This document shows, piece after piece, positions 28,522 through 53,384 of a stretch of DNA of 64,000 nucleotides (position 1 is the first letter of the stretch; each line of letters opens with the position of its first letter). The notes below the pieces were generated by a model, which was not told the DNA's origin, searched no databases, and saw only the letters and a list, made by a program, of their open reading frames with translations. The position numbers and the translations under genes are program-made. This DNA is from Okamejei kenojei (taxonomy: Eukaryota), in assembly GCA_035221665.1 (NCBI GenBank), contig CM069133.1, positions 35,340,001-35,404,000 of the forward strand, written 5' to 3'.

Positions 28522-28582
28522 ATGATGCTCCTCTCCACTTGGCTGTCTACTGTTCTGCTGTTGGTCTCAGTACATGGAAACA
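28522..28582 (+). CDS. Siglec-15-like Ig receptor exon 1 (signal peptide MMLLSTWLSTVLLLVSVHGN)
   Basis: Hydrophobic leader ending VHG. Phase-1 donor A|GTAGGT at 28583 is in frame with the exon at 34441. An ETS site lies ~90 bp upstream. Confidence 0.75.
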
Positions 28583-29799
28583 GTAGGTGTTTTTTTATTT
28601 GTTACAATCGCCTTATTGGTACAGTGCAGGTTTATTACTGTTGTCTGTACCGAGTTACAGTGAAGAACGGTGTTTGTGTGTTTTTCAGTCAAACCATGGG
28701 ATATACTAATAATGGGATAGACACAAAGTGCTGGAGTAACTCGGCGGGTTAGGCTGCATTTCTGGTGAAGACACAAAATGCTGGAGTAACAACAGGCAGC
28801 ATTTCTGGAGAAAAGGCATAGGTGACGTCTTGAGTCAAGACCCTTCTTCAGACTGAGGAGACTTAGACCCATCTTTAGACTGAAGAACATGGATAGGTGA
28901 TGTTTGGTGTCAGGCCCTTGTCTTCAGAAACATCACCCAGTTTAGATTAGTTTAGTTTATTGCCAGGTGTACCAAGGTACAGTGTAACGTTTTTTTTTGT
29001 TGTGTGCCATCCACTCAGCAGAAAGACCGTACACATGATTACAATCCAACTGTCCACAGTGTACAGATCCAGGATAAAGGGGATAACGTTTAGTGCAAGA
29101 TAAAGTCCAGTAAAGTCCCATTAAAGATATTCCAAGAGGCTCGAATGTGACTTGGATCACGTCCAGGTCACACTGGTAGCTCAGGATAGCCCTCCAGTTG
29201 TTGATGGGATGGTTCAGCTGCGTGAAAACTATAGCTGGGAAGAAACTATCCCTGTATCTGGAGGTGTGCGTTTTCACACTTCTGTATCTCTTGCCTGATG
29301 CGAGAGGGGAGAAGAGGGAGTGTTCTCCAGAGATGCTGCCTGACCCACTGCGTTACTCCAGCATTTTGAATCTATCTTCGGTATAAACCACCATCAATTG
29401 TTCCTTTTTATTACACTAATATTGTTTTTGTGTAACTTTATTGATCTTTCGATTATTACGCTATCTAATGTGCCTACAGACTTGTTATGCTGTTGTAAAT
29501 AAGAATTTCATTGTTTGTTTCAGAACATATGATAATTAAGCACTGTTGATTCTTGACTTGCAATCATGCCATACGCATGCACAAAAGAAAAAAAAAATCC
29601 ATATTGGCTACGGTAGAGATGCTGCCTTGCAGCGCCAGAGGCCAGGTTTGCCCTGGCTATGGGTGCCCTCTGTATGGAGTTTGGACATTCTCCCTATGTG
29701 GGTTTACACTGGGTACTCCGGTTTCCTCCCACACTCCAAGGATGTACAGGTTTGTAGGTGAATTGGCTTTGGTAAGTTTTAAAATTGGGAATTGGAGGA

Positions 29800-30106
29800 G
29801 AGGATGAGGTCACGATCTCTACCAGACACAGATAGCCGTGACTGTCCTCCACCCTCAGCTGCTTTATCCTGGTTGAGGCGTTTCCCCGCTCTGGTTCCCC
29901 GACCAGCTCGAACCGAGTTGCTCCGTTCTCCGCCGCCCAGGATCCTTCAGCTTGGAGTCTGAATGTGACGATGTGTCGGTAGGGATCTTTCCTCATCCAC
30001 GTGACCGAGAGTGAGACATTGTTGAGTGGAGGCGGTGGGAACACACAGGGTAACGTGTCCGAATCCCCCTCAGTCCCAGTCACCACTGAGACATTCCCGC
30101 TGGGAG
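29800..30106 (-). pseudogene. Inverted, 3'-truncated paralogue of V-domain exon 3, lying in intron 1
   Basis: Acceptor ttcttccttcag|. 83/98 aa identical to exon 3 from GNVSV to EIVTS. Homology stops before the G strand and donor, at a SINE (~29600-29790). Confidence 0.85.
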
Positions 30107-30199
30107 CTGAAGGAAGAACTGACACCGGTCAAGAGAAGCAGGAGGAGAGAGCTGGAGATAATGTATGCTGGAAATAAGAACTGGATGCTGGACATGCTG

Positions 30200-31882
30200 A
30201 ATGAGCTTTAGATGTGTCATAAGTTCATAAATGATATGTTGAATTAGGCAGTTCGGCCCACCAAGCCTACCATTCAAACATGGCTGTTCTATCTTATCCT
30301 CTCAACCCCATATTCCCCTGCCTTTTTCCCCCCATCCCCCGACACCCGTCCTAATCAAGAATCTGGTAAATCTCTGCCTCAAAAATATCCATTGACTTGG
30401 CCTCCACACCCTTCGACGGATATGAATTCCACAGATTTACCACCCTCTGACTAAAGAAATTCCTCCTTATTTCCATTCTAAAGGTACATCCTTTTATGCT
30501 GATGCTGTGGCCTCTTATCCTTGACTATCCCACGAGAGGAAACATCCTCTCCACATGCACTCTATCCAGGCCTTTCACTATTCAGTAACTTTCTATTAAG
30601 TCCCCCGTCATCCTTCTATACTCCAGCCAGTACAGGCCCAGTGCAGTCAAACGCTCATCATATGTTAACCCACTCATTCCTGGGATAATTCTCGTAAACC
30701 TTCACTGGACACACACACGCACATACATACAACATACATACACACACGCATATACACACAACATTCACACAAACACACACGTGCTAACACATGTTAGAAC
30801 ACGTGCACACACACACACACACCTACACACACACCCATGCCTGCACAATAAAGGGATGCAGATGAACACGTACGGTCACAGATATATGCACACAGAAATG
30901 AGACGCACACACACAGTCACTGACATACACACAAAGTAGACACATAGACAGTACCACGTACACACTGCCGCATGTACACATGCACACAAATGAGATGTGC
31001 ACACATACAGGAATATAGACAGACACACAAATATACACCAGCAAGTGACACACGCACACACATACATATAGACACTCGCACGCACGAGACATACAAATGG
31101 ACACACATACACGCACTCACACATTCATACAAAAACATACACAATGACCCAATGACACACACAAACCAAGAGACATCGACGCATACGTGTATGCACGCAC
31201 CCGACAGAATCACACACACATAGATATACAACCCACATGCACACCCATACACAAACAGATACACACGCATAGCGATAGGCACACATTTACTCACACACAT
31301 GCACTCGCACAGACACACATGCAGCCACAAATGCAGCACCAGGCACACACAAATACACATTTTCTTACCTGCACTTTCTCTGTAGGTTTTCCTTGTGTGG
31401 TCTGGTTTCCTCCCACATTCCAAAGGCGTGCAAGTTTGTATGTTAATTGGCTTCTGTAAACTGCCCCTAATGCGTAGGATGCAGAACTGGGATCGCATTG
31501 AACTGGTGATCGCTGGTTGGCGGGGACTCAGTGGGCTAAAGGGTCTGTTTCCATGCTGCATCTCTAAACTAAACTGAATCTAGAACAGATTTGAACAGGT
31601 ACACGGATACGAAAGGTTTAGAGGAATATGGGCCAATGACGGGCAGGTAGCACTAGTGTAGAGCAGGCATCTTGCCATCTTGGGAAAGTTGGGCTGAAGT
31701 GCCTGTTTCCACACTGTATGACTATGATATGATTCCAACATAACGGGTGTCAGAGGTTATGGGGAGAAGGCAGGAGAATGGGGTTAGAAGGGAGAGATAG
31801 ATCAGCCATGATTGAATGGCGGAGCAGACTTGATGGGCCGAATGGCCTAATTCTACTCCTATTCCTTATGATCTTATGACTT
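30200..31882 (-). repeat. Inverted duplicate of intron-2 sequence (matches 36045-37500 and ~43947-45110)
   Basis: The same CR1 tail, SINE, CA/TG-rich block and unique pre-acceptor sequence appear in reverse complement and in the same order. Confidence 0.85.
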
Positions 31883-34440
31883 TCATCCCTCTCCTCTCCT
31901 GGCCACCTTTGACCTTCGTGCCCAGTGGGCGCCTCCCACAGCCGACCTTGAAGGCGTGGAAGACAAGACCCCCCTTCCCCCAGTTCTTCTTTGCAGCCTC
32001 CTTTATTCCTGCATGTTCGAGTTATTGAACCAGGCTGTGATTCAACCAGTCTATGCTCTCCACCGTATACCTGTACAAGTTGTGTAGAGTGTTCGGCGAC
32101 ATGCCGATACTCCTCAAACTTGTGAGGAAGTAGGGGTGTTGATAAGCATGTTCTTTGTGACTTCAAAATAGAAGATCTGGTAGATTTCTTGATATTGGGG
32201 GATGAAGACATAGCGCAGGGGATGGTGTGAAGATAAAAGACCAGCCATGGCCACATTGTTAGCTGACAAGGCTCGAGCAGCCAAATGGCTTACTCCTGTT
32301 CCTCTTTCTCTTGTTCTAATGCAACAATGTGGAAATTTGCTGCAAAAATGACAAAACGTTAACTTTCAGTAGAAAAGCAGGAAGCATTACCAGTGTAGTC
32401 ATTGATGTCCTGGAAAAATAGAATCAAGAACAGTACAATGTGTGGATTTGTAGGCGGATTGGCCCTCTGTAAATTGCCCCTAGTGTATAAAGAGTGGATG
32501 AGAAAGTGGGGGTAACATTGCACTCCGGTGGCAGAGTGGCGCAGCGGTATAGCTGCGGCCTGACAACACCAGATTCCCAGCTTCAATCTCGACTACGGTT
32601 GTCTGTAGGGAGTTTGCACGTTCTCCCCGTGACCCCGTGGGTTTCCTCCAGGTGTTCCAGTTTCCTCCCACATCCCAAACATGTGCAGGTTTGTAGATTA
32701 ATTAGCTGCTGAAAATTATCCCTGATGTGTAGGATAGAGCGAGTGTATAGGGATCGCTGGTCCGCGTGGACTCGGTAGGCCGAATTACCTGTTTCCACAC
32801 TGTATCTCTAAACTAAATTAAACTAAAGTTAAATTGTTATTGGATGGTCAGCACTGACTCAGCGGGCTGAAGGGCCTGTTTTCTCGCTGTTTCTTCAAAC
32901 TAATACTACACACGTAAAAGGGAGCTGAGGGGCAAGTATTTCACACAAAGGGTGGTGTGTGTGTGTGTTGAACGAGCTATCAGAAGAAGTGGCAGAGGCA
33001 GGTACAATTATAATGTTTATAAGACATTTGTACAGGTTTGTGGATTGGAAAGGTTGAGAGGGATATGGGTCAGGCAAAGGCAAATGGGACGGGCGAGGTC
33101 AGCACGGATGACTTGGGCCGAAGGGCCTGTTTCCACGCTGTATAACTCGATGACTGTGACAATGCACACGAGCCCAGGGGAGGCAGCAACTGTACCACTT
33201 AGCCCCGCTCGAGAGTGATGGACCAGGAGTCAGGAGTCTACGCACATGGAGTAAATCAATCTCTGGGTGACGTTTCAGGTCGAGACCTTTTTACATCACC
33301 ATGAGTAAATAACAGGCTCCAGGAACGTCACACCAGAAACCTCGACCGACAATCCATTATGGTCTCCACCCTTCCCGAGATCTTCTGTTGCTGGCCCTGT
33401 TTTGTTCTGGCATCCTCTATCTTTCAGCATGAAAAAGTGTTGCGGCCCGAGAGATGCTGCCTGGCCCGCTGACAGCATGATGTGCAAAACGTTAGTTTAT
33501 GTGCTTATCAGGGGAGGCCATTTGCAACCCTCATTTCTTGTTTCATTGACAACGGCGCATGTGATGCTCATTGTCCCAAGTTCATGAGATCATATGTTCT
33601 TGGAGCAGAGTTTGACAGTTTGCCCGATCAAGTCTACTCCTCCATTCAATCATGGCTGATCTATCATTCCCTCCCAACATCATTCTCCTGCCTTCTCCCC
33701 ATAACCCCTTGACACCCTTACGAATTAAGAATCTATCAATCCCCACCTTAAAAATATCAATGGACGGCCTCCACAGCCATCTGTGGCAATGACTTGCACA
33801 GATTCACCACCCTGCGACTAAAGAAATTCCTCCTCATCTCCTTTCTGAATGAACATCCTTTTAATCTCCTCATTTCCTCCTGAAGGGTTATTTCAAACCT
33901 CAGATCAATGTCTTCCAGGCCTTTGCTTACCCCCCCCCCCCCCCACCCCCTAGCTGAAAATCCACAATTTGAAATGTTGATTCCAAAATGTATTTGGTTA
34001 ATGACCTTTGTGAACCACAGTGGCTTCACAATGATTATTGTGTGGGGAAAAATAGGACAAAGTGCCGGGCAGCATCTGAGAAGGGGACAGGACGGACAAC
34101 ATTTAGAACGGCCTGACCTGAAATGCCCTCTGTATTTTTCCCTTTGGCTGGCACAGTGGCGCAGCGATAGAGTTGCTGACATATTATGCCACAGACTCAG
34201 GCTCAAAAGGGTAAAAAGTGTGAAAACGCACACCTCCAGTTTTAGGGACAGTTTCTTCCCGACTGCTATCAGGCAACTGAACCTTCCAACTGGAATTGGA
34301 GAGCGGTCCTGAACCACTATCTACCTCTTTGGAGACTTTTGGACTGTCTATGATCAAACTTTACTGGACTTTTATCTTGCACTAAATGTTATTCGCGATA
34401 TTACCGACGCGCTATTGATTACCGACCCTTTCTATTCCAG

Positions 34441-34821
34441 CAGCCACCCATACTTGGCATTTTCTAACTGCTGACGAAGTATATGCCGTGGAAGGAGGCT
34501 CGGCTTTGTTGCCGTGTACGTTCACCCGCCCGGCCACTGATCACACCATCAAACTCGAGCTGATCTGGTTCAACGGTGACCTGCGGGGTTTCGATGCCAT
34601 TATTACGTGTCAGTTCACTTCTCCCTTCCACTCCTTGTGCACTGAAGTGGGGCATGAGGCAGGAGGAGATCGGGTTAGGTTCATCGGGAACCTAGGTCGG
34701 GGGGATGCCTCGATAATGGTGGAGCGACTGGGACAGGAGGATGATGGTCTATATCAGTGCAATGTGAACAACATCGATGGACTACCTCTATTACAAAAGG
34801 TCGTTCACCTGACTGTGGGAG
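34441..34821 (+). CDS. Siglec-15-like Ig receptor exon 2 (V-set domain 1)
   Basis: Acceptor tttctattccag|, donor G|GTGAGG, phase 1/1, 381 nt open. Encodes WHFLTADEVYAVEGGSALLPCTFTRP..LIWFNG..IITCQFTSPFHSLCTE..RVRFIGNLGRGDASIMVERLGQEDDGLYQCNV..HLTV. It has the canonical Cys/Trp/DxGxYxC and an extra Cys pair as in Siglec-15. Confidence 0.9.
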
Positions 34822-35219
34822 GTGAGGAAGGCTCTAACTGTACCAATAACGGTGGAGCAATGGTAGAGCCGCTGCCTCTCAGCGGCAGGGACACGGGTTC
34901 GATCTCCCAATCCAACTTGTTGCAGCCTTTGCAAATTGTTTTTACATGCACTTTCTCTATCGCTGCAGCACATTCTACTGCATTCTGATAATGTTCTTTT
35001 TTGCGCCAGCTCGTATACTCAACCTCTCAACATTTCAACATAATAGCGGTAGAACTGCAGCTTCACAGCGCCAGTGAGCTGGCTTGGCTACGGATGCTGT
35101 CTGTACGCAGTTTGCATGTTATCCCTGTGACCCCGTGGGTTTTCTCCGGGTGCTCCAGTTTCCTCTCACATTTGAAATACACATGTTTGTCGGTTAATTG
35201 GATTCTGTAATTTGCCTTG

Positions 35220-35740: not shown

Positions 35741-36044
35741 TACACCTGGCATTAAACTAAACTAGTAACTGGCTCTTCTAGTAACCAATATATCCCAACT
35801 AAGACAATTGGTTGGAAACACAAAAGACTCTAGATGCAATCCCAAGCAAAACAAGGTACTGGAGGAACCTAGTAATTCAGGCAGAATCGGTGGAGGGATT
35901 AGACAGACTGTCCATTCCCTTCACAGATGCGACATGACACACTGAGTTTCTCCCTAACTTTGATTTAATTGGGTATTAATTGGTTGATTGGTGCATTATT
36001 ATTAACGTTACCGAAATGGAGTCAAAATCCTTGTTTTGCATGCT

Positions 36045-37503
36045 AAGGTCATAAGGTCGTAAGGAATAGTAGAATTAAGGCATTCTTTCCACCAAATCTG
36101 CTCCGCCAGTCAATCATGGCTGATCTATCTCTCCTAACTCCATTCTCCTGCCTTCACCCCATAACGTCTGACACCCGTTATGTTGGAATCGTATCATAGT
36201 CATACAGTGTGGAAACAGGCACTTCAGCCCAACTTTCCCATGATGAGCAAGATGCCTGCTCTACACTAGTGCTACCTGCCCGTCTTTGGCCGATATTCCT
36301 CTAAACCTTTCGTATCCGTGTACCTGTCCAAATGTCTTCTAGATTCAGTTTAGTTTAGAGATACAGCTTGAAAACCGGCCCACTGAGTCCCCGCCAACCA
36401 GCGATCACCAGTTCAATGCGATCCCAGTTTTGCACCCTACGCATTAGGGCAGTTTACAGAAGCCAATTAACCAACAAACTTGCACGTCTTTGGAATGTGG
36501 GAGGAAACCAGACCACACAAGGAAAACCGGGATGGACCCGGGTCTCTAGTAGTGTTATTGCCGCCACTGTGCTGGCCTTATGTTGAAATGTTGGGAAGTT
36601 GAGTATACCAGGAAGTGCAGAAGAGAAAATTATCACAGTGCAGAATGTAGCACTACACCTACAGAGAAAGTGCAGGTAAGAAAATGTGTATTTGTGTGCG
36701 CCTGGTGCTGCATTTGTGGCTGCGTGTGTGTCTGTGTGAGTGCATGTGTGTGTGTGAGTAAATGTGTGCTTATCGCTATGCGTGTGTGTCTGTTTGTGTA
36801 TGAGTGTGTGCATGTGGGTTGTATATCTGTGTGTGTGTGATTCTGTCGGGTGCGTGCATGCACGTATGCGTCAATGTCTCTTGGTTTGTGTGTGTCATTG
36901 GGTCATTGTGTATGTTTTTGCATGAATGTGTGAGTGCGTGTATGTGTGTCCATTTGTATGTCTTGTGCGTGCGAGTGTCTTTATGTATGAGTGTGTGTGT
37001 GTCACTTGATGGTGTATATTTGTGTGTCTGTCTATATGCTTGTATGCGTGCACATCTCATTTGCGTGCGTGTGTATATGCGGCAGTGTATACGTGTCACT
37101 GTGATAGTGTCTCGTTTGTGTGTATATCAGTGACTGTGTGTGTGCGTCTCATTTCTGCGTGCATATATCTGTGAATGTATGTGTGCATCTGCAACCCTAT
37201 ATTGTGTAGGCATGGGTGTGTGTGTGGTGTGTAAGTGTGGGGGTGTGTGTATGGCTGTGTGTGTGTGTGTGTGCGTGTGTGGGTCTGTGTGTATGTAAGC
37301 GTGTGTATGTGTGTGTATGTGGGCATGTGTGTGTCTGTGCGTGCATGTGTTCGTACATGTGTGATAGCACGTGTTTGTGTGTGAGAGTGTACATGTGTAT
37401 GTGTGCATGTTTTGTGTATATGGGTGTGTGTGTGCGCAAGTGTATATGTGTGCATTCATGCATATGTGCTTGTGTTCGTGCCCATGTGCATATGTGTGTG
37501 TGT
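36045..37503 (+). repeat. Plus-strand arm of the inverted duplication (SINE plus degenerate TG-rich satellite)
   Basis: Reverse complement of ~30710-31882, e.g. AGAAAGTGCAGGTAAGAAAATGTGTATTTGTG; it carries ~130 bp absent from the minus arm. Confidence 0.85.
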
Positions 37504-37856: not shown

Positions 37857-40800
37857 TGGGAGTATAAAGATGGAATTAAAGGGGAAGTGAGTACAGGAAA
37901 AGTTACAGAATACTCCCGAATTATTGGGAAGGAAAGTTTGAGAAAGGATAAGAGAGTAAGGTCAGGGCCAATTGTGAGCGGTGTGCGAGGGGGTGAATAC
38001 AGAGGTCAAAGTGTTGTATATGAATGTGCCAAGTACAAGAAATAAAGTGGACGAGCTTGAGACTCAGTTAGAAATTGACAAGTATGATGTTGTGGGAATT
38101 ACAGAGACATGGCTGCAAGAGGGCCAGGGCTGGGAATTGAATATTCTTGTGTATACCTCCTATCGAAAATCCAGACAGGTGGGCAGAGGGGGTGGGGTAG
38201 CTCTGTTGGTGAGGAATGAAATTCAGTCCCTTGCATGGGGTATCATTGAAACAGGAGATGTGGAGTCAGTATGGATATAACTAAGGAATTGTAATGGTAA
38301 AAATACCCCAATGGGACTCATCTGCAGGCCCCAAAACAGTAGCCTGGATATTGGGTGCAAGTTGAATCAAGATTTAAAATTGGCATGTCGTAAAGGTAAT
38401 GCTACAGTTGTTATGGGAGATTTCAACATGCAAGTAGACTGGGAAAATCCGGTTGGTACTGGACCCCAAGAAAGGGAGTTTGTGGAGTGCCTCCGTGATG
38501 GATTCTTAGAGCAGCTTGTAGAGGAGCCTACCACGGAGAAGGCAATTCTGGATTTAGTGTTGTGTAATGAACCAGATTTGATAAGGGAACTTGAGGTTAA
38601 GGAGCCATTAGGAGGTAGTGACCATAATATGGTAAGTTTTAATCTACAATATGAGAGGGAGAAGAATAAATCGGAGGTGTCCATGTTACAGTTGAACAAA
38701 TGAGACGATGGAGCCATGAGGGAGGAGCTGGCCAAAGTTGGCTGGAAATATACCCTAGCAGGGATGACAGTGGAACAACAATGGCAGGTATTTCTGGGAA
38801 TAATACAGAAGGTGCAGGATCAGTTTATTCCAAAGAGGACGAAAGATTCCAAGGGGAGTAAGGGGTGAACGTGGCTGACAAGGAAAGTCAGGGACAGATT
38901 AAAATTAAAAGAGAAGTACAACATAGCAAAGATGAGCGGGAATTAAGCGGATTGGGTAATGTTTAATGAGCAACAGAAGATAACTAAAAATGCAATACGG
39001 GGAGAAAAGATGAGGTCCAAAGGTAAGCTAGCCAAGAATATAAATGAGGATAGTAAAAGTTTCTTTCGGTATGTGAAGAGGAAAAAAATAATTAAGATCA
39101 AAGTTGGACCCTTGAAGACCGAAAAAGGTGAATTTATTATGGGGAACAAGGAAGTGGCAGATGAGTTGAACAGGCACTTTGGATGCGTCTTCACTAAGGA
39201 GGACACAAACAATCTTCCTGATGTACGAGTGGCCAGAGGATCTGGGGTGACGGAGGAACTGAAGGAAATCCACATTAGGCAGAAATGGTGTTGGGTAGAC
39301 AGATGAGACTGAAGGCTGATAAATCTCCAGGGCCTGATGGTCTGCATCCCAGGGTACTTAAGGAAGTGGCTCTCGAAATTGTGGATGCATTGGTGATAAT
39401 TTTCCAATGTTCTATAGATTCAGGATCAGTTCCTGTGGATTGGAGGGTAGCTAAAGTTATCCCACTTTTTAAGAAAAGCAGGAGAGAAAATACAGGGAAT
39501 TAAAGACCAGTTAGCCTGACATCAGTGGTGGGGAAGATGCTGGAGTCAATCAAAAAAGTTGAAATAGCGGCACATTTGGATAGCAGTAACAGGATCGGTC
39601 TTAGTCAGCATGGATTTATGAAGGGGAAATCATGCTTGACTAATCTTCTGGAATTTTTTGAGGATGTAACTAGGTAAATGGACAAGGGAGAGCAAGTGGA
39701 TGTAGTGTACCTGGACTTTCAGAAAGCATTTGATTAGGTCCCACATAGGAGACTAGTGGGAAAAATTAGGACCCATGGTATTGGAGTAGAGTGCTGATAT
39801 GGATAGAATATTGGTTGGCAGACAGGCAACAAAGAGTAGGGATTGACGGGTCCCTTTCAGAATGGCAGGCAATGACTAATGGGGTACCGGAAGGCTCGGT
39901 GCTGGGACCGCAGCTATTTACAATATACATCAATGATTTGGATGAAGGACTTCAAAGTAACATTAACAAATTTGCAGATGACACAAAGCTGGGTGGCAGT
40001 GTGAACTGTGAGGAGGATGCTATGAGAATGCAGGGTGACTTGGACTGGTTGGGTGAGTGGGCAGATGCATGGCAGATGCAGTTTAATGTGGATACATTTG
40101 AGGTTATCCACTTTGGTAGCAAAAACAGGAAGGCAGATTATTATCTAAATGTATCAAGTTGGGTAAAGGGGAAGTACAACGGGATCTGGGGTCCATGTAC
40201 ATCAGTCTATGAAAGTAAGCATGCAGGTACAGCAGGCATGAAGAAAGCTAATGGCATGTGGGCCTTCATAACAAGAGGAGTTGAGTATAGGAGCAAAGAG
40301 GTCCTTCTGCAGTTGTACATGGCCATAGTGGGACCACACCTGGAGTATTGTGTGCAGTTTTGGTCTCCTAATTTGAGGAAGAACATTCTTGCTTTTGAGG
40401 GAATGCAGCGTAGGTTCACAAGGTTAATTCCCGGGATGGCGGGACTGTCATATTCTGAGAGAATGGAACGGCTGGGCTTGTACACTCTGGAATTTAGGAT
40501 GAGAGGGGATTCTATTGAAACATATAATATTATTAAGGGTTAGAATCATAGAATTATAGAAAATAGGTGCAGGGGTAGGCCATTTGGCCCTTCGAGCCTG
40601 CACCGCCATTCAATATGATCATGGCTGATCATCCAACTCTGATTCCTTTAGCCACAAGGGCCACATCTCCTCTTAAATATAACCAATGAACTGGCCTCAA
40701 CAACCTTCTGTGGCAGAGAATTCCACAGACTCACCACTCTCTGTGTGAAAAATGTTTTCCCCATCCCGGTCCTAAAAGACTTGCCCCTCATCCTTCAACT

Positions 40801-43800
40801 GTCCCCTTGTTTTGGACCCCAACATCGGGAACAATCTTCTGCCTGTCCAACCCCTTCCACACTCATCTCCTAAATTCCAGCAAGTACAAGCCGAGTCTAT
40901 CCAGTCTTTCTTCCTGGTGAACCTTCTCTGTACTCCCTCTATGGCAAGAATGTCTTTCCTCAGATTAGGAAACCAAAACTGTACGCAATACTCCAGGTGT
41001 GGCCTCACCAAGACCCTGTACAACTGCAGTATAACCTCCCTGCTCTTGTACTCAAATCCTTTTGCTATGAATGCCAACATACCATTCGTTTTCTTCACAG
41101 CCTGCTGCACCTGCATGCCTACTTTCAATGCATCGTTGCATCTCCCCTTTTCCCAATCGGCCACTGTTCAGATAATAGTCTACCCTCCTGTTTTTGCTGC
41201 CAAAGTGGATAAACCTCACATTGCAATGCATTTGCCCACTCACCAAGCTATCGAAGTCACCTTGCAGCTCCTAGCATCAATCCACAAACGTGGAGATGTT
41301 GCATTCAATTCCCTCATCCTGGGTCCCAGCACTGAGCCTTGCTGTCACCAAGACCGTTTACCCTACTCTTTATGAACCACCAATACCGTGTGCTTTAAGT
41401 TTGAATGCTAATCTCTTATGTGGGACCTTGTCGAAAGCCTTCTGAAAGTCCAGATATAACACATCCACAGGTTCTCCCTTATCCACTCTACTAGTTACAT
41501 CCTCGAAAAATTCTATAAGATTCGTCAGACATGATTTACCTTTCATAAATCCATGCTGACTTTGTCCAATGATTTCACCACTTTCCAAATGTGCTGCTAT
41601 CCCATCTTTAATAACTGACTAGCATTTTCCCCACTACCGATGTTAGAATAACTGGTCTGTAATTCCCCGTTTTCTCTCTCCCTCCCTTTTTAATAAGTGG
41701 GGTTACATTAGCTACCCTCCAATCCTCAGGAACTACTCCAGAATCTAAAGAGTTTTGAAAAGTTATCACTAATGCATCCACTATTTCTGGTGCTACTTCT
41801 TTAAGTACTCTGGGATGCAGCCTATCTGGCCCTGGGGATTTATCGGCCTTTATTCCATTCAATTTACATAACACCACTTCCCGGCTAACATGGATTTCAC
41901 TCAGTTCCTCCTTCTCATTTGACCCCCGGTCCCCTGCTATTTCCGGCAGATTATTTATGTCTTCCTTAGTGAAGACAGAACCAAAGTAGTTATTCAATTG
42001 GTCTGCCATGTCCTTGTTCCCCATGATCAATTCACCAGTTTCTGACTGCAAGGGACCTACATTTGTTTTAACTAACCTTTTTCTCTTCACATATCTATAA
42101 AAAACTTTTGCAGTCCGTTTTTATGTTCCGTGCCAGTTTTCTTTCATAATCTATTTTCCCTTTCCTAATTAAGCACTTTGTCCTCCTCTGCAGGACTCTG
42201 AATTTCTCCCAGTCCTCTGGTAGGCTGCTTTTTCTGGCCAATTTGTATGCTTCATCTTTAGTTTTGATACTATCCCTGATTTCCCTTGTTATCCACGGAT
42301 GCACTACCTTCCCTGATTTATTCTTTTGCCAAACTGGGATGAACAATTGTTGTAGTTCATCCATGCAGTCTTTAAATGCCTTCCATTGCATATCCACTGT
42401 CAACCCTTTAAGAATCACTTGCCAGTCTATCTTGGCCAATTCACGTCTCATACCCTCAAAGTTACCTTTTTTTAAGTTCAGAACCCTTGTTTCTGAATTA
42501 ACAATGTCACTCTCCATCCTATGAAGAATTCAACCATATTATGGTCACACAGAAAAGGCTGGAGAAACTCAGCGGGTGCAGCAGCATCTAAGGAGCGAAG
42601 GAGATAGGCGACGTTTCGGGTCGAGACCCTTCTTCAGACGGGTCCAGCCTTTTGTATATAATCAATTTTCCAGCATCTGCAGTTCCTTCTTTAACAAATT
42701 ATGGTCACTCTTGCCCAGGGGGCCACGCACAACAAGACTGCTAACTAACCCTTCCTCATTACTCAGTACCCAGTCTAGAATAGCCTGCTCTCTCGTTGGT
42801 TCCTCTACATGTTGGTTTAGAAAACTATTCCGCATACATTCCAAGAAATCCTCTTCCTCAGCACCCCTGCCAATTTGATTCACCCAATCTATATGTAGAT
42901 TGAAGTCACCCATTATAACTGTTTTACCCTTGTTGCACGCATTTCTAATTTCATGTTTGATGCCATCCCCAACTCCACTACTACTGTTAGGTGGCCTGTA
43001 CACAACTCCCACTAGCGTTTTCTGCCCCTTAGTATTTCGCAGCTCTACCCATATCGATTCCATATCCTCCAAGCTAATGTCATTCCTTTCTATTGCGATA
43101 ATCTCCTCTCTAACCAGCAACGCTACCCCACCTCCTTTTCCTTTCTGTCTATCCCTCCTGAATATTGAATATCCCTGGATGTTCATCTCCCAGCCTTGGT
43201 CACCCTGGAGTCATGTCTCCGTGATCCCAACTATATCATATTCATTAATAACTATCTGCACATTCAACTCATCCACCTTATTACGAATGCTCCTTGCATT
43301 GAGACACAAAGCCTTCAGGTTTGTTTTTACAGCACTCTTACCCCTTATACAATTATGTTGAAAAATTGCCCTTTTTGATTTTTGCCCCGGATTTTTCTGC
43401 CTGCCACTTTTACTTTTCACCTTGCTACCTATTGCTTCTACCCTCATTTTACATCCCTCTGTCTCTCTGCTCATGCTCCCATCCCCCTGCCACATTCGTT
43501 TAAATCCTCCCTGACAGCACTAGTAAACACTCCCCCAAGGACATTAGTTCCCTTCAAGCCCAGGTGCAGACCATCCTGTTTGTACTGGTCTGTACTGGTT
43601 TGGATGTGCTAGAGGCAGGAAACATGTTCCCGATGTTGGGGGAGATCAAGAACCAGGGGTCACAGTTTAAGATTAAGGGGTAAGGCATTTAGAACTTTAT
43701 CACACAGAGAGTTGTGAGTCTGTGGGATTCTCTGCCTCAGAGGGGGGTGGAGGCCAGTCCTCTGGATACTTTCAAGAGAGAGCTAAATAGGGCTCTTAAA

Positions 43801-44599: not shown

Positions 44600-45114
44600 G
44601 GCTGGAGGATTGAAGGGTGAGAGGGACTTCATAGAAACGTACTGAATACTGAAAGGCCTGGATTGACTGGATGTGGAGAGGATGTTTCCACTAGTGGGAG
44701 AGTCAAGGACTAGAGGCCACAGCCTCAGAATAAAAGGATGTACCTTTAAAATGGAGATGAGGAGGAGATTATTTAGTCAGAAGGTGGTTGTGGAATGCAC
44801 TGCCACAGAAGGCTGTGGAGGTCAAGTCAATGGATATTTTTGAGGCAGAGATTTGCCAGATTCTTGATTAGTACGGGTGTCACGGGTTATGAGCAGAAGG
44901 CAGGAGAATGGGTTTGAGAGGGTAAGGTAGATCAGCCATGTCTGAATGGTAGACTTGATGGGCCGAATGGCCTAATTCATTTCATATCACTTATGAACAT
45001 GACACGTCTAACGCTCATTCAGCATGAGTCCAGCATCCAGTTCTTATTTCCAGCTTACAGTATCTGCAGCTCCCTCGTCCTGCTTCTCTTGACTGGTGTC
45101 TGTCCTTCCCTCAG

Positions 45115-45453
45115 GGAATGTCTCAGTGGTGACTGGGACTGAGGGGGCTTCGGCTACGTTACCCTGTGTGTTCTCACCGCCTCTGCTGAGCCACATGCCT
45201 CGCACGGTCACATGGATGAGGAAGGATCCCTACCGGCACATCGTCACGTTCAGAACCCAAACTGATGGATCCTGGGCGGCGGAGAACGGAGCAACTCGGT
45301 TCGAGCTGGTCGGGAAGCCAGAGCGGGGAAACACCTCAACCAGGATAAAGCAGCTGAGAGTGGAGGACAGTCACGGCTACCTGTGTCTGGTGGAGATTGT
45401 GACCTCGACCTACCATCTGTTCCAGTGTGAGATCCAACTGCAAATTGCAACAG
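45115..45453 (+). CDS. Siglec-15-like Ig receptor exon 3 (V-set domain 2)
   Basis: Acceptor ccttccctcag|, donor G|GTAAGA, phase 1/1, 339 nt open. Encodes NVSVVTGTEGASATLPCVF..VTWMRKDPY..RFELVGKPERGNTSTRIKQLRVEDSHGYLCLVE..IQLQIAT. Confidence 0.9.
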
Positions 45454-45529
45454 GTAAGAAACCCCACCAACTCATGCTGCAGTGTGCAGCGAAGGTATCT
45501 AGGGTTAGCTTCAGTGCTAGGTTTTTGTT

Positions 45530-46810: not shown

Positions 46811-49514
46811 TATTTTTTTGTTTTATATTGTCACAAAGGACAAAGGACATTTATTATCACACACACCAATTGGTGCAGTGAAATTTGACTTGCCAATGCA
46901 GCACATGAATAAAGATGTGTACACGTGTACCTAAGTATGGTTAAAAAGCTTTTGTTTGCAAGGCTATCTGATCAGGTCATATAATATTGTATGCGAATAC
47001 AATCAAACCAAACACAAGTACCACAGGAATCGATCGGGTAGACGCACACTCTTGCCCAGAGCAGGGAAATTGAGAACTGGAGGACAATGGTTTTAGGGGA
47101 AGGCTGGAAGGGCAAAAGATTTTATTGGAATCTGAGAGGTAACTTTTTTGCACAAAGGGTGATAGGTGTATGGAACAAGATGCAGCAGCAGGTAGCTGTG
47201 GCAGGTACTATCACAATGTTTTAGAAGCAATTGGACAGGTACATGGATAGGACAGGTTTAGAGGGATATGGGCCAAATGCAGACAAGTGGGATTAGCGTA
47301 GATGGTAGACACAAAACGCTGGAGTAAATCAGCGGGACAGGCAGCATCTCTGGAGAGAAGGAATGGGTGACGTTTCAGGTCGAGACCCTTCTTCAGGCAG
47401 ATCTACAGTTCTTTCCTACACATTAGTGTAGATGGGGCATGTTGGTCAGTGTGGGCAATTTGGGCTGAAGGGCCTGTTTCCACATTGTATGACTTGATGA
47501 CTCATTGATTCTATAATAGGTAGAGCAAAGAGAAAGAAATCAGATTGCAGAATATGGAGAATTACACCATGGAAACAGGCCCTTCGGTCCACCGAGTTGA
47601 TGCTGACCAACGATCACCCCATACACGAGCACAATCCTACACACTAGTCAAAAATTATAATCTTCCTAAAGCCAATTAACCTATCAACCTGTATGTCTTT
47701 AGATTGTGGGAGGAAACCAGAGCATTCAGAGAAAACCCACATAGTTTCAAGGAAAACGTACAAACTCTGTACAGACAGCACCCGTAGTCGGGATTGAATC
47801 CAGGTCTCTGGTACTGTAAGGCAGCAATTCTACTGCAGTGCTACCATGCCACCCACATTATAGAAAACTAGTTTCTTCATATTGTAGGGTTACATTTCCA
47901 GAGACCAATGTCTGCAATCAGGTAGGTTGGAAAATCGTAACTATGTCATAGCTTATGGAAGGACCATACAGCAGTCCATACAGAGTTTGTACATTCTCCC
48001 TGTGACCGTGTGGGTTTTCTCCAGGTGCCCCGGTTTCCTCCCACACTCCAAAGATTTTCCTCCCACACTCCAAACGGTTTGTACGCTACTTGGCCACTGT
48101 AAATTGTTCCAAGGTTTTAGGATAAGTAGTAATATAGAATTAAAAGGGTGGAACAGCAGTAGAGTTGCTGCCGCACAGCGCAGGAAACCCAGTTTCGATC
48201 CTGACTATGGGTGCTCTCTATACAAAATTGTCACATTCTCCCTCTGACCTTGTGGGTTTTCTCCGGGTGTTCCGGTTTGCTCCCACGTTTCAAAGGCACA
48301 CAGATTTGTAGTTTAATTGACTTCTGTAAATTGCCCCAAGTGTGTAGAAAGGTAGGACACCATAGAACTAGTGTACGTATGATCATTGGTTGGCGGGGAC
48401 GCTGTATCTATAAACACTATTCTAAGTTGGCTGCTTTGTCTTGGAAAGTTTTGAGCTTCTTAAAAGTTGTTAGTGAAGAATTGGAGAGTGCTGCATCACT
48501 CCTGACTTGTGCTTTGTAAATGATGTCATGTCTTTGGAGTGTTACAAGGTGGCTCCCTGAGACAGGATGTTATGATAGCTCTTGCGGTCACAATATTTTA
48601 GGTTTAGGGTTATATTTATCACGTGTGAAAAGTGAACTTTACAGCGTACAAAAGCTCTTCACAGTGAAAAGCTTTGTTTTGCATGCTTTAGACATTGCAC
48701 TTTAGAGATACATACTATAGATACAGTGCGGAAACAGGACTTTGGCCCACCGAGACTGCACTGACCAGTGATCACCTTATATACTAGCACTATTCCAAAC
48801 ACTGGGGGCAATTTATAATTTTATCAAAGCCAATTAACCTACAAACCTGTACATCTTTTGAGTGTATGAGGTGACTGGTGCAACTGGAGGAAAAACCCAA
48901 GCGGTCACAGGGGGATCGTTCAAACTCCACACACAGACAGCACCCGAGATTGGGATCAAACCAGGCTCTCTGGCGCTGTGAGGCAGCGGCCCTATCAGTG
49001 GGGTACAGTGCTGCACTTTGTTGGGGGATGGTCAGTTGATGGAGCAGCTGGAAATAGTTGGGGCTTGGGACTACAAAATGCTGGGTTGAGGTGATTAACC
49101 CAGAGCAAACACAATCACCTACCTCACACTGTGACTCCAGCCAACAGCGAGTTTGCTCCACAATCCCCATTATTATTAATCTTCCCCACTGTCTCAATGG
49201 CAAGGCAACCGTGTGACTAACGTAATCTGTATGCTCCATTTTGTTGGTCCTTGTTGGAGGGAATTGTGTGTTTGACCTGGACGGGCAGCACACAAAAAAC
49301 ATCTCGCAGAATGGTGACGAGTTTCTCAAACAAGTCATGTTATTCAAGGCCTTCACACTAAATACTGGGGAACACTCTGAGGGAACCCAAAGTGTTTCAA
49401 TGATTCACAGCATCAATGGGCTTTTCGTCACAATGACCACATATAGACTCTACATTTTGAAATAATTCAACAACGCTTCTCGGCAGCTTTCATCCGTGTT
49501 TTTTTCCGCGGCTG

Positions 49515-50187
49515 ATCAGCTAGGATTTGAGGGTGTCAAATGCTTTCTGGTGTTGCGGGAACCAGGCCCAGGCAGTGTCCATTTTCACCAGGTCCCCAAG
49601 AGGGGCGCTCAGTTCACTCAGGTCGAGGATGAACTTTCCCAGGGTTTTGGCGTCGGGAGAACAGTTTGAAATGCTCTAAGATGTGGTTAGTGGGAAGGAT
49701 CAGACATACCGGGTCCTGAACACTCTCGCCTGGTCCATAGATGAATGACTCCGACCGCTCAAGTGCTTCGGGACCAGCCAGGTTCAGCAGAAGGGAGGCT
49801 TTGACTGCGGGGGCCACAGCAGGGTGAGCAATTGTAACACAATGCTCAAAGTCACGTCAGAACACACTCCAGCTCATCAAAGACTAGGATGTCAGGTCTA
49901 CGACAGGCAGAAGCCATCACGGCACAGGGAGGGGGTACTGGGACTAAGAAAATAAAACTCGATAAACTGGAGAAGCAGGAAGAAAAACTTCTGATGCCAT
50001 GTAAAGAAGATACTCGGATACCATTGGATCTTTACTACTTTATTAATCATACATTATTGCCCTAGCTGTACGTGGTCTGTCACGATCACCAGAGAGAGTG
50101 CTAGGGGTGTGTAGGTTACAATTATACTAACTGATGGGGGAGTGTTTAGCATGGACATCGTCACCATCAATTAAAGGTGTATACACA
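49515..50187 (-). mobile_element. Internally deleted Gypsy LTR retrotransposon remnant (5' LTR, PBS, gag start, RT-thumb fragment)
   Basis: LTR ~50187-50000 (TG...AATAAA...CA), PBS TGGCATCAGAAG (49999-49988). gag reads MASACRRPDILVFD..KASLLLNLAGPEALERSESF..FSRRQNPG from 49917, followed by pol LGKFILDLSELSAPLGDLVKMDTAWAWFPQHQKAFDTLKS. Confidence 0.8.
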
Positions 50188-50382
50188 TACCATCTACACC
50201 TTCTATTCCTTGTTATTTAGAAAAACATTCCCCCATTTGTCTGACAGTGGGTGCAATAAAGGACATCTCTATTTTATGATCAGTTCTCTTGTTCTCAGCC
50301 TGGTTTTACAGCCTCTTATTTTTATCTTTACTACAGCAAGCTATGCCTTGTACTCCTAAATCTATTTATTGCCTCTCCTAGT

Positions 50383-50875
50383 GTGAGTATCTTCCCATCT
50401 CCACTCCTTTCTGCTTTCCGCAGAGACCGTTCCTTCTGTAACTCCATGGGCAACTCATCCTTTCCCACCCAAACCACCCCTCCCCAGGCACTCCCCTGCA
50501 ACCGCAGGAGATGCTACACCTGTCCCTTTACCCGCCCCCCCGACTGCATCCAAGAACCCCGACAGTCTTTCAAGGTGAGGCAGAGGTTCATATGCACCTT
50601 CTCCAACGTCATCTACTGCATCCGCTGTTCCAGGAGTCAACTTCTCTACATCGGCGAGACCAAGTGCAGGCTCGGCGACCATTTCGCTGAACACCTCTGC
50701 TCAGTCCGCATTAACCAAGCTGATCTCCCGGTGGCCCAGCACTTCAACTCCCCCCTTCCATTCACAGTTCCTCCATTGTCAGAGTGAGGCCCAGTGCAAA
50801 TTGGAGGAACAGCTTGTTTCACTTGGGTAGTTTACACCCCAGCGGTATGAACATTGACTTCTCCAACTTCAGGTA
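50383..50875 (+). mobile_element. Penelope-like element GIY-YIG fragment
   Basis: CNRRRCYTC..NVIYCIRCSRSQLLYIGETKCRLGDHFAEH. Confidence 0.8.
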
Positions 50876-51638
50876 GCCCTTACTTTCTCTCTCCATCTCC
50901 TCCCCCTTCCCAGTTCTCCCACTAGTCTTACTGTCTCTGCCTACATTCTTTCTCTGTCCTGCCCTCTCCACTAACATTAGTCTGATGAAGGTCTCAGGCC
51001 GAAACGTCGGCAATTCCTTTTCTCTAGAGATGCTGCCTCACTTGCTGAGTTACTCCAGCATTTTACAGCAGTGTCTACCTGAGTATTTACTAAGTTACCT
51101 TTAGTATGTTGGCCTCTTTTTGCATCATGCTTCCCCACAATGTAAGCTCTTGGTCACCTTCTCTTAAACACCAGTCCTTCACTGATATACTAAGAATGTC
51201 TCCCCCATAATGCCCATTTTAATGCCTATCGAGTCTTCTAGGTTTAGATTTAGGTTTATTATTGCCATGTGTAGCCAGGTACAGTGAAAAGCTTTATTTT
51301 GCACGCTATCCAAACAGATCAGATAATACTACACATAAACACAATCCAACCAAACTCGAGTACAATAGGTAGAGCATAGAAGATACAGGGTGCGGAATAT
51401 AGTTCTCAGCATTATAGCACACCAGTTCCACAGACAAAGTCCAATGTCCTCAATGAGGTAGAGGTGACAGTACCGTAGTATTTGGAAGGGCCATTCTGAA
51501 GCCTGCTAACAGAGGGGAAGGAGCTATTCCTGAGACTGGTGGTGCATACTTTCAAGCTTCTGTACCTTCTGCTGGAGATAGTAAAATGAATTGTCTCCAT
51601 GTTATTGATCGAGTCTGGTTTGACTTCTCTCTCTTCAG

Positions 51639-51738
51639 CCCCACAGTTTTCCTACACTCTGATACTATGTATTCCACTTGGAGTGAAAAGCCTTGTCCTT
51701 TTGGTGATGGGCTTCATTTTAATCAGGGACAAAACCAG
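51639..51738 (+). CDS. Siglec-15-like Ig receptor exon 4 (transmembrane helix with Lys)
   Basis: Acceptor tctctctcttcag|, donor AG|GTATGT, phase 1/2. Encodes (A)PQFSYTLILCIPLGVKSLVLLVMGFILIRDKT; Lys codon at 51686-51688. Confidence 0.85.
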
Positions 51739-53368
51739 GTATGTAATATTGCTGCGAGATACTTGTTTCCAATATCCGCAATGTGATTCATGGTCTTCTT
51801 CTGGTGATTCATCAAAAACATTAATTCCTTTTCTCTCCCTGTAGATGCTGCCTGACCAACTGAGTGTTCTTGGTGTTCTCTCCCCTCTCTCAATCTGTCT
51901 GTTTCTATCTCAGGGGACAGACTATCCATAGATATTTACGGCAGACACACTGACATCTTCCTTGACTACACCCAGCCCCACCCTGTCTCCTGCAAGATTG
52001 CCATTCCTTTCTCCCTCTGTTCTCACGATGCTTTCCCCTTTCGGACATCTGAGAAGTTATTTTTATTCATTCAGACTTATTCATTCAAACTTATTCGTTC
52101 AAATTTATTCATTCATTCACTCATTCATTCATTATTCAGGAAATGTGGATCTTGCACAGTCTGATATTATCCTTTCTTCCCAGGTTTTTCTGTTTTTCTC
52201 TGTGTCAAACCTTGTCGACCCATTTTAGCATCCAATTTGTCTATTACACAGCATGGAAACAGGCCCTTTGGCCCCATCTGATATAATCCCATGTGCCGGC
52301 ATTTGACATATCCCTCTAACCCTTTTGTGTCCATTGCGGACATTGGACATTGTCTCTGGAACTGATGCGCTACAATGCTGAGAACTATATTCTACACTCT
52401 GCACCTTCCCATTTGCTCTACCTATCGTACTTGTTTGACTTGATTGTATTTATGTGTAGCATCATCTGATCTGATTGTTTTTGCATGAAAAACAAAGCTT
52501 TTTACTGCACCTCAGTTCATGTGACAATTATAAAACTGAACCTAAAGGGGAAAAGAAATTCAGGGGGTGAAGGAGGGTCCTGACCCGAAATGTTCCCTGC
52601 CCATTCCCTCCACAGACGCTGCCTGACCTGATGAATTCCTCCAGCACTCTGCGTTTTGCTCACAATTCCAGCATCTGCAGTTCCTCGTGTCTCCCATGCT
52701 CTGCCCCGTCTCTCCCCATGGACGTTCACATTCTTTGCCTGAATAGCTCAGATGTGATGGTACTCAGTGAATGGAGCGCTGCAAGTCCAGGAGGGGGTGA
52801 GCGAGTGAGGTTTAGGATTAGGCTAATTATTGGCACAGCTATTGAGGTACAGTGAAAAGCTTTGCCTTGCATGCCATCCAATCAGATTAGATAATATGGT
52901 GGACATTTGCAATCAAGTGACACTCAAGTACAAAGGGGAAGATCCACCAGAGTTGCTCCAGGGTTCTCCTGAGATGCTGCCTGACCCACTGAGTTACTGC
53001 AGAACTGTGTGTCATAAGTTCATGTTCATAGGTTCAAGAAGCAGAATTAGGCCATTCGGCCCATCAAGTCTATGCCACCATTCAATCATGGATGATCTAT
53101 CTTCCCCTCTCAACCCCATTTTCCTGCCTTCTCCTCCGTAACCCGACACCCGTAATAATCAAGTGTCTTTCTTTGATAAACCAGTATCTGCAGTTCCTTG
53201 ACACATGGTAATGCCGTCCGTCCATTTCCCTCCACATTTGCTGCCTGACCTGCTGAGTGGTCACCGCCTACCCTGTAACCATTCCGTGATGCTACCAATC
53301 AATGGGTAAAAAAGATTTTCCAGTGGAATTACTGAAGCTCATTTTAACTGGTCTTGTTCTGTCCACAG

Positions 53369-53384
53369 AAGGAGTCGGGACTAA
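53369..53384 (+). CDS. Siglec-15-like Ig receptor exon 5 (short tail (R)RSRD-stop), followed by 3'UTR
   Basis: Branch point plus polypyrimidine acceptor ttttaactggtcttgttctgtccacag|. The phase-2 join with exon 4 gives AG+A AGG AGT CGG GAC TAA. Candidate AATAAA at 53917-53922. Confidence 0.65.

What the first reader, a model, noticed from the sequence alone, without database searches (positions are those of the whole stretch)
28522..53384. Complete hidden gene: V-V Siglec-15-like activating immune receptor (298 aa) with TM lysine and almost no tail
Seen: five exons (28522-28582, 34441-34821, 45115-45453, 51639-51738, 53369-53384) with GT/AG sites and compatible phases (1,1,1,2) splice to an 897-nt ORF: signal peptide-V-V-TM(K)-RDKTRRSRD. 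Known: Siglec-15 is V+C2, with a TM Lys (LGFKALLLL) that binds DAP12. Here both domains resemble the Siglec-15 V domain (LPCTFT, W..GD/KDPY, RF.L.G....G..S....L...D...Y.C.V) and the TM reads LGVKSLVLL. Inference: a tandem-V, ITIM-less, adaptor-dependent receptor from a Siglec-15-derived family in cartilaginous fish, with an architecture different from canonical Siglec-15.
Basis: partly seen in the sequence, partly recalled or inferred. Interest (0 to 1): 0.85.

Follow-up and report, generated by a model that had tools for sequence, protein, structure and literature searches.

The report
Siglec-15-like two-V activating receptor gene
An intact five-exon gene in a skate-like fish encodes a small immune receptor with two Siglec-15-related V domains and a lysine in its membrane anchor; it belongs to a large shark-and-ray receptor family that databases predict under wrong names and that I found described in no paper, so it is real and moderately interesting, not unprecedented.

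Summary
All five exons sit at the stated coordinates with AG/GT sites and phases 1,1,1,2, and sum to 897 nt (298 codons plus stop). Translated exon by exon, they align collinearly with one annotated little-skate protein of identical architecture (P0001, 289 aa, misnamed 'HAVCR1-like'), at 90/73/84/91 % identity.

Both Ig exons are V-set. V1 is a Siglec-15-type V: human Siglec-15 (7ZOZ) is the best solved match, at E 2.5e-10 alone and 3e-23 with a family profile. V2 belongs to a separate, old V lineage of the same superfamily. Both lack the sialic-acid arginine (Asn in V1, Leu in V2). The window holds no C2 exon.

The gene belongs to an elasmobranch-wide paired-receptor family. Some members have a Lys-bearing membrane segment and a short tail; others have an uncharged segment and an ITIM tail. 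It sits in an Arg-less, activating-type subclade found in four batoid orders. Adaptor (DAP12-like) signalling and a non-sialic ligand are inferred, not shown.

The scan's first readers also flagged a similar V-V-TM(Lys) gene 173 kb beyond this window (untested). Verdict: a real gene, a new variant of a known kind, interest about 0.4.

The parts
28522..28582 (+). Exon 1: start codon and signal peptide (20 codons plus 1 nt), donor GTAGGT
   Evidence: It is the only credible leader exon between 26000 and 45114. It is 90 % identical to the leader of P0001.
34441..34821 (+). Exon 2: V1, a Siglec-15-type V-set domain with four Cys. The sialic-acid Arg position is Asn (QCNVN).
   Evidence: 7ZOZ, E 2.5e-10; N aligned to the R of FCRVE; pLDDT 81; V1 clade 100/99*.
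34969..34988 (+). Candidate alternative terminal micro-exon. Joined in phase 1 to exon 2 it gives ...G-AHSTAF-stop, a soluble V1-only isoform.
   Evidence: acceptor ctgcAG at 34967-34968. Amblyraja radiata P0002 (146 aa) ends with the same AHSTAF. Inferred; no RNA evidence.
45115..45453 (+). Exon 3: V2, the family-specific V-set domain. The Arg position is Leu (YLCLVE).
   Evidence: L aligned to the R of Siglec-15; pLDDT 92.5, nine strands; V2 clade 100/99*.
51639..51738 (+). Exon 4: short stalk, membrane segment with Lys, and start of the tail
   Evidence: It is 91 % identical to P0001. The PLG-V/I-K-x-L-V/I-LLV motif is shared with bird Siglec-15.
53369..53384 (+). Exon 5, coding part: last four and a third codons (R-RSRD) and stop TAA. 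The 3' UTR follows; the first AATAAA is at 53917.
   Evidence: P0001 ends RRNRD.
29802..30095 (-). Truncated inverted copy of exon 3 inside intron 1. It is open for 98 codons but lacks the G strand and the donor, and it runs into a SINE-like repeat.
   Evidence: dN/dS 0.35. It has no leader, V1 or TM exon on the minus strand. Most likely a dead fragment.
29806..31883 (-). Inverted segmental duplication of 36045-37335 plus 44600-45406 (part of intron 2 plus most of exon 3), 85-91 % nt identity
39791..43186 (.). LINE remnants that inflate intron 2: reverse transcriptase at 39791-40543 (+) and endonuclease at 42662-43186 (-)
   Evidence: This stretch is absent from the inverted copy, where the two flanks lie about 80 nt apart.

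Best explanation
This is an intact five-exon gene for a 298-residue type I membrane protein: signal peptide, V1, V2, a membrane segment with one lysine, and a nine-residue tail. It is the counterpart of Leucoraja erinacea P0001. It belongs to a shark-and-ray multigene family derived from the Siglec-15 V lineage, in which a second, anciently diverged V domain stands where Siglec-15 has its C2 domain. The family is a paired-receptor system. Activating-type members have the Lys-bearing membrane segment and almost no tail. Inhibitory members have an uncharged membrane segment and a tail of about 110 residues ending in a VxYxxV ITIM. This gene is of the activating type. It lies in a subclade that lost the sialic-acid arginine before the batoid orders split. 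Inferred mechanism: the membrane lysine pairs with the aspartate of a DAP12-like ITAM adaptor, as in Siglec-15. The V1 face, lacking the arginine, binds something other than sialic acid in the canonical way. An alternative terminal micro-exon may yield a soluble V1-only form. Shown here: gene structure, domain types, family membership, Arg loss and absence of C2. Inferred: expression, adaptor, ligand and soluble isoform.
For: Exons, splice sites and phases were read directly. The exons are collinear with one annotated 289-aa skate protein of the same architecture at 90/73/84/91 % identity. No other leader exon lies upstream of either V exon. No further Ig or C2 exon was found in the window when C2-bearing relatives were used as queries. 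Siglec-15 7ZOZ is the top solved match for V1 (E 2.5e-10) and for the family profile (E 3e-23). In the careful domain tree, V1 and V2 are each 100/99* and each includes sharks; V1 joins bony-vertebrate Siglec-15 V domains at 94/89; the TIM-like outgroup is 100/100*. Arg is kept in 25 of 42 V1 domains and lost in all 9 scorable members of the window's 10-row subclade (97*), which spans four batoid orders. Paralogue tails carry VIYAAV or VTYAAV plus repeated CTYASI motifs. The TM motif resembles that of bird Siglec-15.
Against: There is no transcript evidence for this species. Three possibly-RNA runs of the species hold none of exon 2's words. Support for the V1-V2 junction therefore rests on the orthologue's automated model and on the absence of an alternative leader. 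Adaptor pairing and ligand are untested. V1 is only 73-78 % identical to the nearest skate proteins, so strict orthology is not proven.
Confidence: 0.7

Rival explanations
1. It is an unexpressed or decaying gene copy. The reading frame is still open, but the locus is no longer used: it has 6-10 kb introns filled with LINE pieces and an inverted partial duplicate of its own V2 exon in intron 1.
For: No RNA holder was found, and the possibly-RNA runs of the species hold none of exon 2's words. The locus is rearranged and carries many repeats. Both V domains lack the lectin arginine.
Against: All five exons are open with consensus splice sites. The Arg-less state is shared by a subclade across four batoid orders, so it is old and retained. 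Exon translations stay 73-91 % identical to skate proteins. Large repeat-rich introns are ordinary in such genomes.
Confidence: 0.1
2. V1 and V2 are not normally in one protein. The main product is the soluble V1-only form, as annotated in Amblyraja radiata. Exon 3 onward would then belong to another transcript or be used rarely.
For: P0002 (146 aa) is signal peptide plus V1 plus AHSTAF, and the same micro-exon with a good acceptor is present at 34969-34988. Ten kilobases separate the two V exons.
Against: Leucoraja P0001 and dozens of paralogues in sharks and rays join V1 to V2 to TM. No leader exon exists upstream of exon 3. The phases match (1/1). The two isoforms can coexist.
Confidence: 0.08
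3. It is the functional orthologue of Siglec-15 and still a sialic-acid lectin, binding through a non-canonical site.
For: V1 is most similar to tetrapod Siglec-15 V domains. The TM motif is shared. Many paralogues keep C-R-V-E.
Against: The residue aligned to the essential Arg is Asn in V1 and Leu in V2. There is no C2 domain. V-V-C2-TM(K) proteins that NCBI's pipeline names Siglec-15 exist separately in Mobula, and an unnamed one of the same build in Callorhinchus.
Confidence: 0.07
4. It is what the automated names of its relatives say: a TIM/HAVCR1-like or sodium-channel beta-2-like adhesion molecule.
For: P0001 and P0002 carry these names. Nav beta-2 is the second-best solved sequence match (E 8e-8) and tops the fold search.
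Against: TIM-like V domains form a separate 100/100* clade. The sequence read directly shows no mucin stalk. Siglec-15 scores better by sequence than Nav beta-2, and far better with the profile. The fold search does not discriminate among V domains.
Confidence: 0.03

Closest known systems
Siglec-15 (human structure 7ZOZ; bird P0191, frog P0128)
   Same: V1 shares the Siglec-15 V signature: W before strand A, AVLPCTFT-type B strand, a second Cys pair, RF.F.GN, VERL, and Y.C.V in strand F. Both have a membrane segment with a central Lys in a PLG-x-K-x-L-x-LL context. Siglec-15 is known to signal through DAP12 (established knowledge, not tested here).
   Different: The second domain is V-set, not C2. 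The essential Arg (R143 in human) is Asn here. The tail has 9 residues, against roughly 50 or more in the bird and frog Siglec-15 proteins seen here. The gene is one of a large paired activating/inhibitory family rather than a single conserved gene.
Leucoraja erinacea 'hepatitis A virus cellular receptor 1-like isoform X2' (P0001), Amblyraja radiata 'sodium channel subunit beta-2-like' (P0002) and Rhinoraja longicauda LOC144592307 (P0010)
   Same: Same leader, V1 with QCNVN, V2, IPLGVK membrane segment and RDKTRR-x-RD tail. P0002 shares the AHSTAF ending of the candidate soluble form.
   Different: V1 is 73-78 % identical and V2 75-84 %. The window keeps a longer V1 N-terminus that includes the conserved Trp. 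These are automated predictions with misleading names and no described function.
CD33-related Siglecs of mammals (paired receptors, Arg-mutated members)
   Same: By analogy: a lectin-derived Ig family with ITIM-bearing and Lys-TM/DAP12-type members, and with members that lost the binding Arg (established knowledge).
   Different: They come from a different Siglec lineage (V plus C2 domains) and arose independently. No close sequence relationship was seen here: CD33 scores E about 4e-8 against the family profile, while Siglec-15 scores 3e-23.
Skate MDIRs and CD300/pIgR/TREM-type receptors
   Same: Multigene activating/inhibitory Ig receptors in a skate, with modular domain use (recalled from Cannon et al. 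2006; not read here).
   Different: As I recall them, MDIR domains are I/C2-like with CD300/pIgR affinities. Here pIgR is a weaker profile match (1e-17, spanning two domains) than Siglec-15. No MDIR sequence could be retrieved for a direct comparison.

Membership tests
Siglec-15 (canonical) | N-terminal V-set domain of Siglec-15 sequence type, including the extra Cys pair | tested here: met
   7ZOZ is the best solved match for V1 (E 2.5e-10) and for the family profile (E 3e-23, 83 bits on V1). V1 has four Cys.
Siglec-15 (canonical) | Essential sialic-acid-binding Arg directly after the F-strand Cys (C-R-V-E) | tested here: not met
   HMMER alignments place Asn (V1) and Leu (V2) opposite that Arg.
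Siglec-15 (canonical) | Membrane-proximal C2-set domain (V + C2 architecture) | tested here: not met
   tblastn of the window with C2-bearing relatives finds no C2 exon at E < 0.01. Pfam shows V+V only in P0001, against V+C2 in bird and frog Siglec-15.
Siglec-15 (canonical) | Lysine in the membrane segment | tested here: met
   IPLGVKSLVLLVMG. The context is similar in bird Siglec-15.
Siglec-15 (canonical) | Association with DAP12, and sialoglycan binding | not testable with these tools
   Needs co-immunoprecipitation and glycan binding assays. No skate adaptor sequence was available by reference.
Elasmobranch V1-V2 Siglec-15-like paired-receptor family (database predictions only) | V1 in the family V1 clade and V2 in the family V2 clade | tested here: met
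   Both clades are 100/99* and each contains the window's domain. win_V1 groups with P0001 and P0002 at 100/100*, and win_V2 with P0001 at 99/92*.
Elasmobranch V1-V2 Siglec-15-like paired-receptor family (database predictions only) | Activating-type end: IPLG-x-K membrane motif and a tail of about 10 residues | tested here: met
TIM / HAVCR1 | TIM-type V domain (YCCRVE type) followed by a mucin stalk | tested here: not met
   TIM-like V domains form a separate 100/100* clade. Only about eight residues lie between V2 and the membrane segment.
MDIR / CD300-like | Domains grouping with MDIR or CD300/pIgR domains | tested here: inconclusive
   pIgR is a weaker profile match than Siglec-15. The attempt to reach MDIR sequences through a 'pIgR-like' stingray protein returned only TIM-family proteins, so no direct MDIR comparison was made.

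The most novel reading that the evidence does not exclude
Sharks and rays turned the single Siglec-15 gene into a large paired-receptor system. It has V1-V2 ectodomains, Lys-TM activating forms and ITIM inhibitory forms, and arose independently of, and long before, mammalian CD33-related Siglecs. Within that system this gene represents an ancient activating sub-lineage that gave up sialic acid for a different ligand, for example a pathogen or protein ligand, with a soluble V1 decoy isoform.
Probability: 0.3. Interest if true: 0.6.

Novelty: new variant of a known kind. Interest (0 to 1): 0.4.

Why it matters
Siglec-15 is usually presented as a single, conserved V+C2 lectin from fish to man. 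This locus and its relatives show something different in elasmobranchs. There the Siglec-15 V domain was coupled to a second V domain and expanded into activating and inhibitory forms, and an old sub-lineage lost the lectin arginine. That offers an independent, much older parallel to the paired, Arg-losing CD33-related Siglecs of mammals. It also gives a concrete set of genes for asking how ITAM-adaptor-coupled innate receptors worked in early jawed vertebrates. On the practical side, the current database names of the relatives (HAVCR1-like, sodium channel beta-2-like, sialoadhesin-like, pIgR-like) are misleading. I found no description of the family in eight full-text searches, but subscription journals are largely outside that library.

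Tried and rejected
RNA evidence:
- The look-up of sequencing runs gave one holder of unknown kind and three possibly-RNA runs with none of exon 2's words.

Joined model: the joined 298-aa model was not searched, folded or saved. All searches were done exon by exon, by reference.

Fold searches: searches with confident V1 and V2 models returned only generic V-set neighbours (Nav beta-2/4, MPZL1, nectin, CRIg, PD-1). 7ZOZ ranked 8th for V1, so structure does not discriminate here.

MDIR: a search from a stingray 'pIgR-like' protein yielded TIM-family proteins only.

Literature: searches for Siglec-15 in cartilaginous fish, sharks or skates, for MDIR, and for DAP12 in elasmobranchs found nothing relevant.

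Readings I considered and rejected:
- A separate gene starting at exon 3: there is no leader.
- A minus-strand gene using the inverted V2 copy: it has no leader, V1 or TM exon, and the copy is truncated.
- A hidden C2 exon in intron 3: none was found.

Complex prediction was not used, because no adaptor sequence was available by reference.
Full report
**Observation.**
- Exon 1 (28522-28582) starts with ATG-ATG, encodes a 20-residue hydrophobic leader and ends A|GTAGGT.
- Exons 2 (34441-34821), 3 (45115-45453), 4 (51639-51738) and 5 (53369-53384) each follow a pyrimidine tract and an AG.
- Exons 2 to 4 end at GTGAGG, GTAAGA and GTATGT. Exon 5 ends at TAA.
- The lengths 61, 381, 339, 100 and 16 sum to 897 nt and give phases 1,1,1,2.
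- Translated one by one in the implied frames, the exons give a leader, a 126-residue and a 112-residue Ig domain, a membrane segment containing a single Lys, and the end RSRD-stop.

Everything below was done exon by exon, by reference.

**Is it one gene?** Four results say it is.
- A word-indexed search with the exon 2 domain found a 289-residue Leucoraja erinacea protein (P0001, named 'hepatitis A virus cellular receptor 1-like isoform X2'). Its sequence runs leader, V1, V2, IALGVKSLVLLVMG, RDKTRRNRD.
- The window's four main exon translations align in order along that one protein at 90, 73, 84 and 91 % identity.
- A scan for ATG-initiated hydrophobic exons with a phase-1 donor between 26000 and 45114 found only the exon at 28522 as a credible leader. 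Exon 3 therefore has no start of its own.
- Local tblastn of the window, first with 50 and then with about 350 related proteins, hit only these exons, one inverted fragment and LINE pieces. The query set included proteins with C2 domains. No further Ig exon, and no C2 exon, exists in the 64 kb.

**Surroundings.** Intron 1 contains an inverted segmental copy (29806-31883). It matches 36045-37335 plus 44600-45406, which is part of intron 2 plus most of exon 3, at 85-91 % identity.
- The V2 copy (29802-30095, minus strand) is open for 98 codons.
- It loses the G strand and the donor where it runs into a SINE-like repeat.
- With no leader, V1 or TM exon on that strand, it is most likely a dead fragment.
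- dN/dS against exon 3 is 0.35, with half of the amino-acid changes at codons 20-30.

In the copy the two source pieces lie about 80 nt apart. In the gene they are 7.3 kb apart, and that interval holds LINE reverse-transcriptase and endonuclease remnants. This explains the size of intron 2.

**Domain identity.** Both Ig exons pass Pfam V-set. Both fold confidently as V domains: pLDDT 81 for V1 and 92.5 for V2, the latter with nine strands.
- By sequence, the best solved relative of V1 is human Siglec-15 (7ZOZ, E 2.5e-10). The match includes the second Cys pair and the VERL and Y.C.V motifs.
- A profile of 24 family proteins raises this to E 3e-23, ahead of pIgR at 1e-17.
- For V2, Siglec-15 is the best single-domain match (36.7 bits, against 21.5 per domain for CD276).
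- Fold searches returned only generic V-set neighbours and do not discriminate.
- The residue aligned to the essential Arg of Siglec-15 (the R of FCRVE) is Asn in V1 and Leu in V2.

**The family.**
- Searches with P0001 and with V2 found about 50 clusters in eight batoid species: Leucoraja, Amblyraja, Rhinoraja, Hemitrygon, Hypanus, two Mobula species, Pristis and Narcine.
- More relatives occur in sharks (Heptranchias, Heterodontus, Mustelus and others). More distant ones occur in Callorhinchus and other vertebrates.
- Their automated names vary widely: Siglec-15, sialoadhesin-like, HAVCR1-like, pIgR-like, or uncharacterized.
- Many members are V-V with an IPLG-L/V-K membrane motif and a tail of about 10 residues.
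- Others have an uncharged membrane segment and a tail of about 110 residues, with repeated CTYASI motifs and a terminal VIYAAV or VTYAAV ITIM. One of these is from a shark. This is the pattern of a paired activating/inhibitory receptor family.

**Domain tree.** I built a careful tree of 63 V domains, rooted on TIM-like V domains.
- The family's V1 domains form one clade (100/99*) and its V2 domains another (100/99*). Each includes sharks and rays, so the two domain types separated before elasmobranchs radiated.
- V1 joins a group containing bony-vertebrate Siglec-15 V domains at 94/89. V2 lies just outside that group.
- The whole set is separated from TIM-like domains at 100/100*.
- A local V1 profile scores mammalian and bird Siglec-15 V domains highest among non-family proteins (75-86 bits). 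A V2 profile scores them at about 60 bits, below several chondrichthyan V-C2 and V-V-C2 proteins.
- Pfam shows that bird and frog Siglec-15 are V+C2. Callorhinchus, Mobula and lungfish have V-V-C2-TM(K) proteins. The present family is V-V without C2.

**Arginine.** Of 42 V1-clade domains, 25 keep C-R-V/L-E/D as in Siglec-15.
- The window's V1 sits in a subclade with support 97* in the large tree and 98/95* in the careful tree.
- That subclade contains skates, stingrays and mantas, a sawfish and an electric ray.
- All 9 scorable members of its 10 rows carry N, H, S or Y at the Arg position.
- The loss is therefore old and has been retained. This argues for a change of ligand rather than for decay.

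**Mechanism (inferred).**
- The membrane segment closely resembles that of bird Siglec-15: LIL..PLG-V/I-K.L-V/I-LLV..GF.
- Siglec-15 is known to use this lysine to pair with DAP12 (established knowledge; not tested here).
- The nine-residue tail has no signalling motif.
- The most likely working model is an adaptor-coupled activating receptor whose ligand is not canonical sialic acid.

**Possible soluble form.**
- A micro-exon at 34969-34988 has a good acceptor and would join to exon 2 in phase, giving AHSTAF-stop.
- The Amblyraja protein P0002 (146 aa, 'sodium channel subunit beta-2-like') is exactly signal peptide, V1 and AHSTAF.
- This points to a conserved soluble V1-only isoform. It remains unconfirmed.

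**What is missing.** No transcript evidence could be obtained.
- The run search found one holder of unknown kind, and three possibly-RNA runs of the species that lack exon 2's words.
I sent nothing from those places to any search tool afterwards.
- MDIR sequences could not be retrieved.
- Seven full-text searches found no paper describing this family. Subscription journals are largely outside that library.

**Earlier notes of the scan (unchecked leads).**
- Both V domains lost the Arg (s1-880005). I confirmed this here.
- An antisense V paralogue lies in intron 1 (s1-880012). I confirmed it and characterised it as a truncated inverted duplicate.
- Another V-V-TM(Lys) gene lies 173 kb beyond the window (s1-880194). 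This was not tested. It is consistent with a gene cluster.

**Verdict.** It is a new variant of a known kind: a Siglec-15-derived, adaptor-type Ig receptor with a V-V ectodomain and no lectin arginine. Interest is about 0.4.

Noticed in passing
window 34822-34988: The 147-nt interval between the exon 2 donor and the candidate micro-exon is itself in frame and free of stops. Intron retention would therefore also end at the same AHSTAF-stop, with 49 extra residues.
   Followed up: partly
window 29802-30095 (-): The inverted V2 fragment keeps an open frame for 98 codons. Half of its 16 amino-acid differences from exon 3 lie at codons 20-30 (the BC loop). dN/dS is 0.35 on small counts.
   Followed up: partly
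window 36045-37335 and 44600-45406 versus 29806-31883: The two source pieces of the inverted duplication are 7.3 kb apart in the gene but about 80 nt apart in the copy. Either the LINE-rich 7.3 kb entered intron 2 after the duplication, or it was deleted from the copy.
   Followed up: partly
window 14128-15216 and 18583-19027: Two blocks of internally repeated (tandem-like) sequence showed up in the self-comparison. There is also a 137-base N run at 16733-16869, which I left untouched.
   Followed up: no
proteins P0003, P0005, P0020 (Hemitrygon akajei): In these paralogues the first domain groups inside the V2 clade, which gives a V2-V2 arrangement. Domain shuffling therefore occurs within the family.
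   Followed up: no
proteins P0074, P0058 (Protopterus), P0101 (Atractosteus), P0122 (Pleurodeles): Lungfish, gar and salamander also have proteins with two to seven Siglec-15-type V domains. There the V domains of one protein are each other's nearest relatives (recent tandem copies), unlike the old V1/V2 split of elasmobranchs.
   Followed up: partly
I did not examine it further or send it to any search tool.
   Followed up: no
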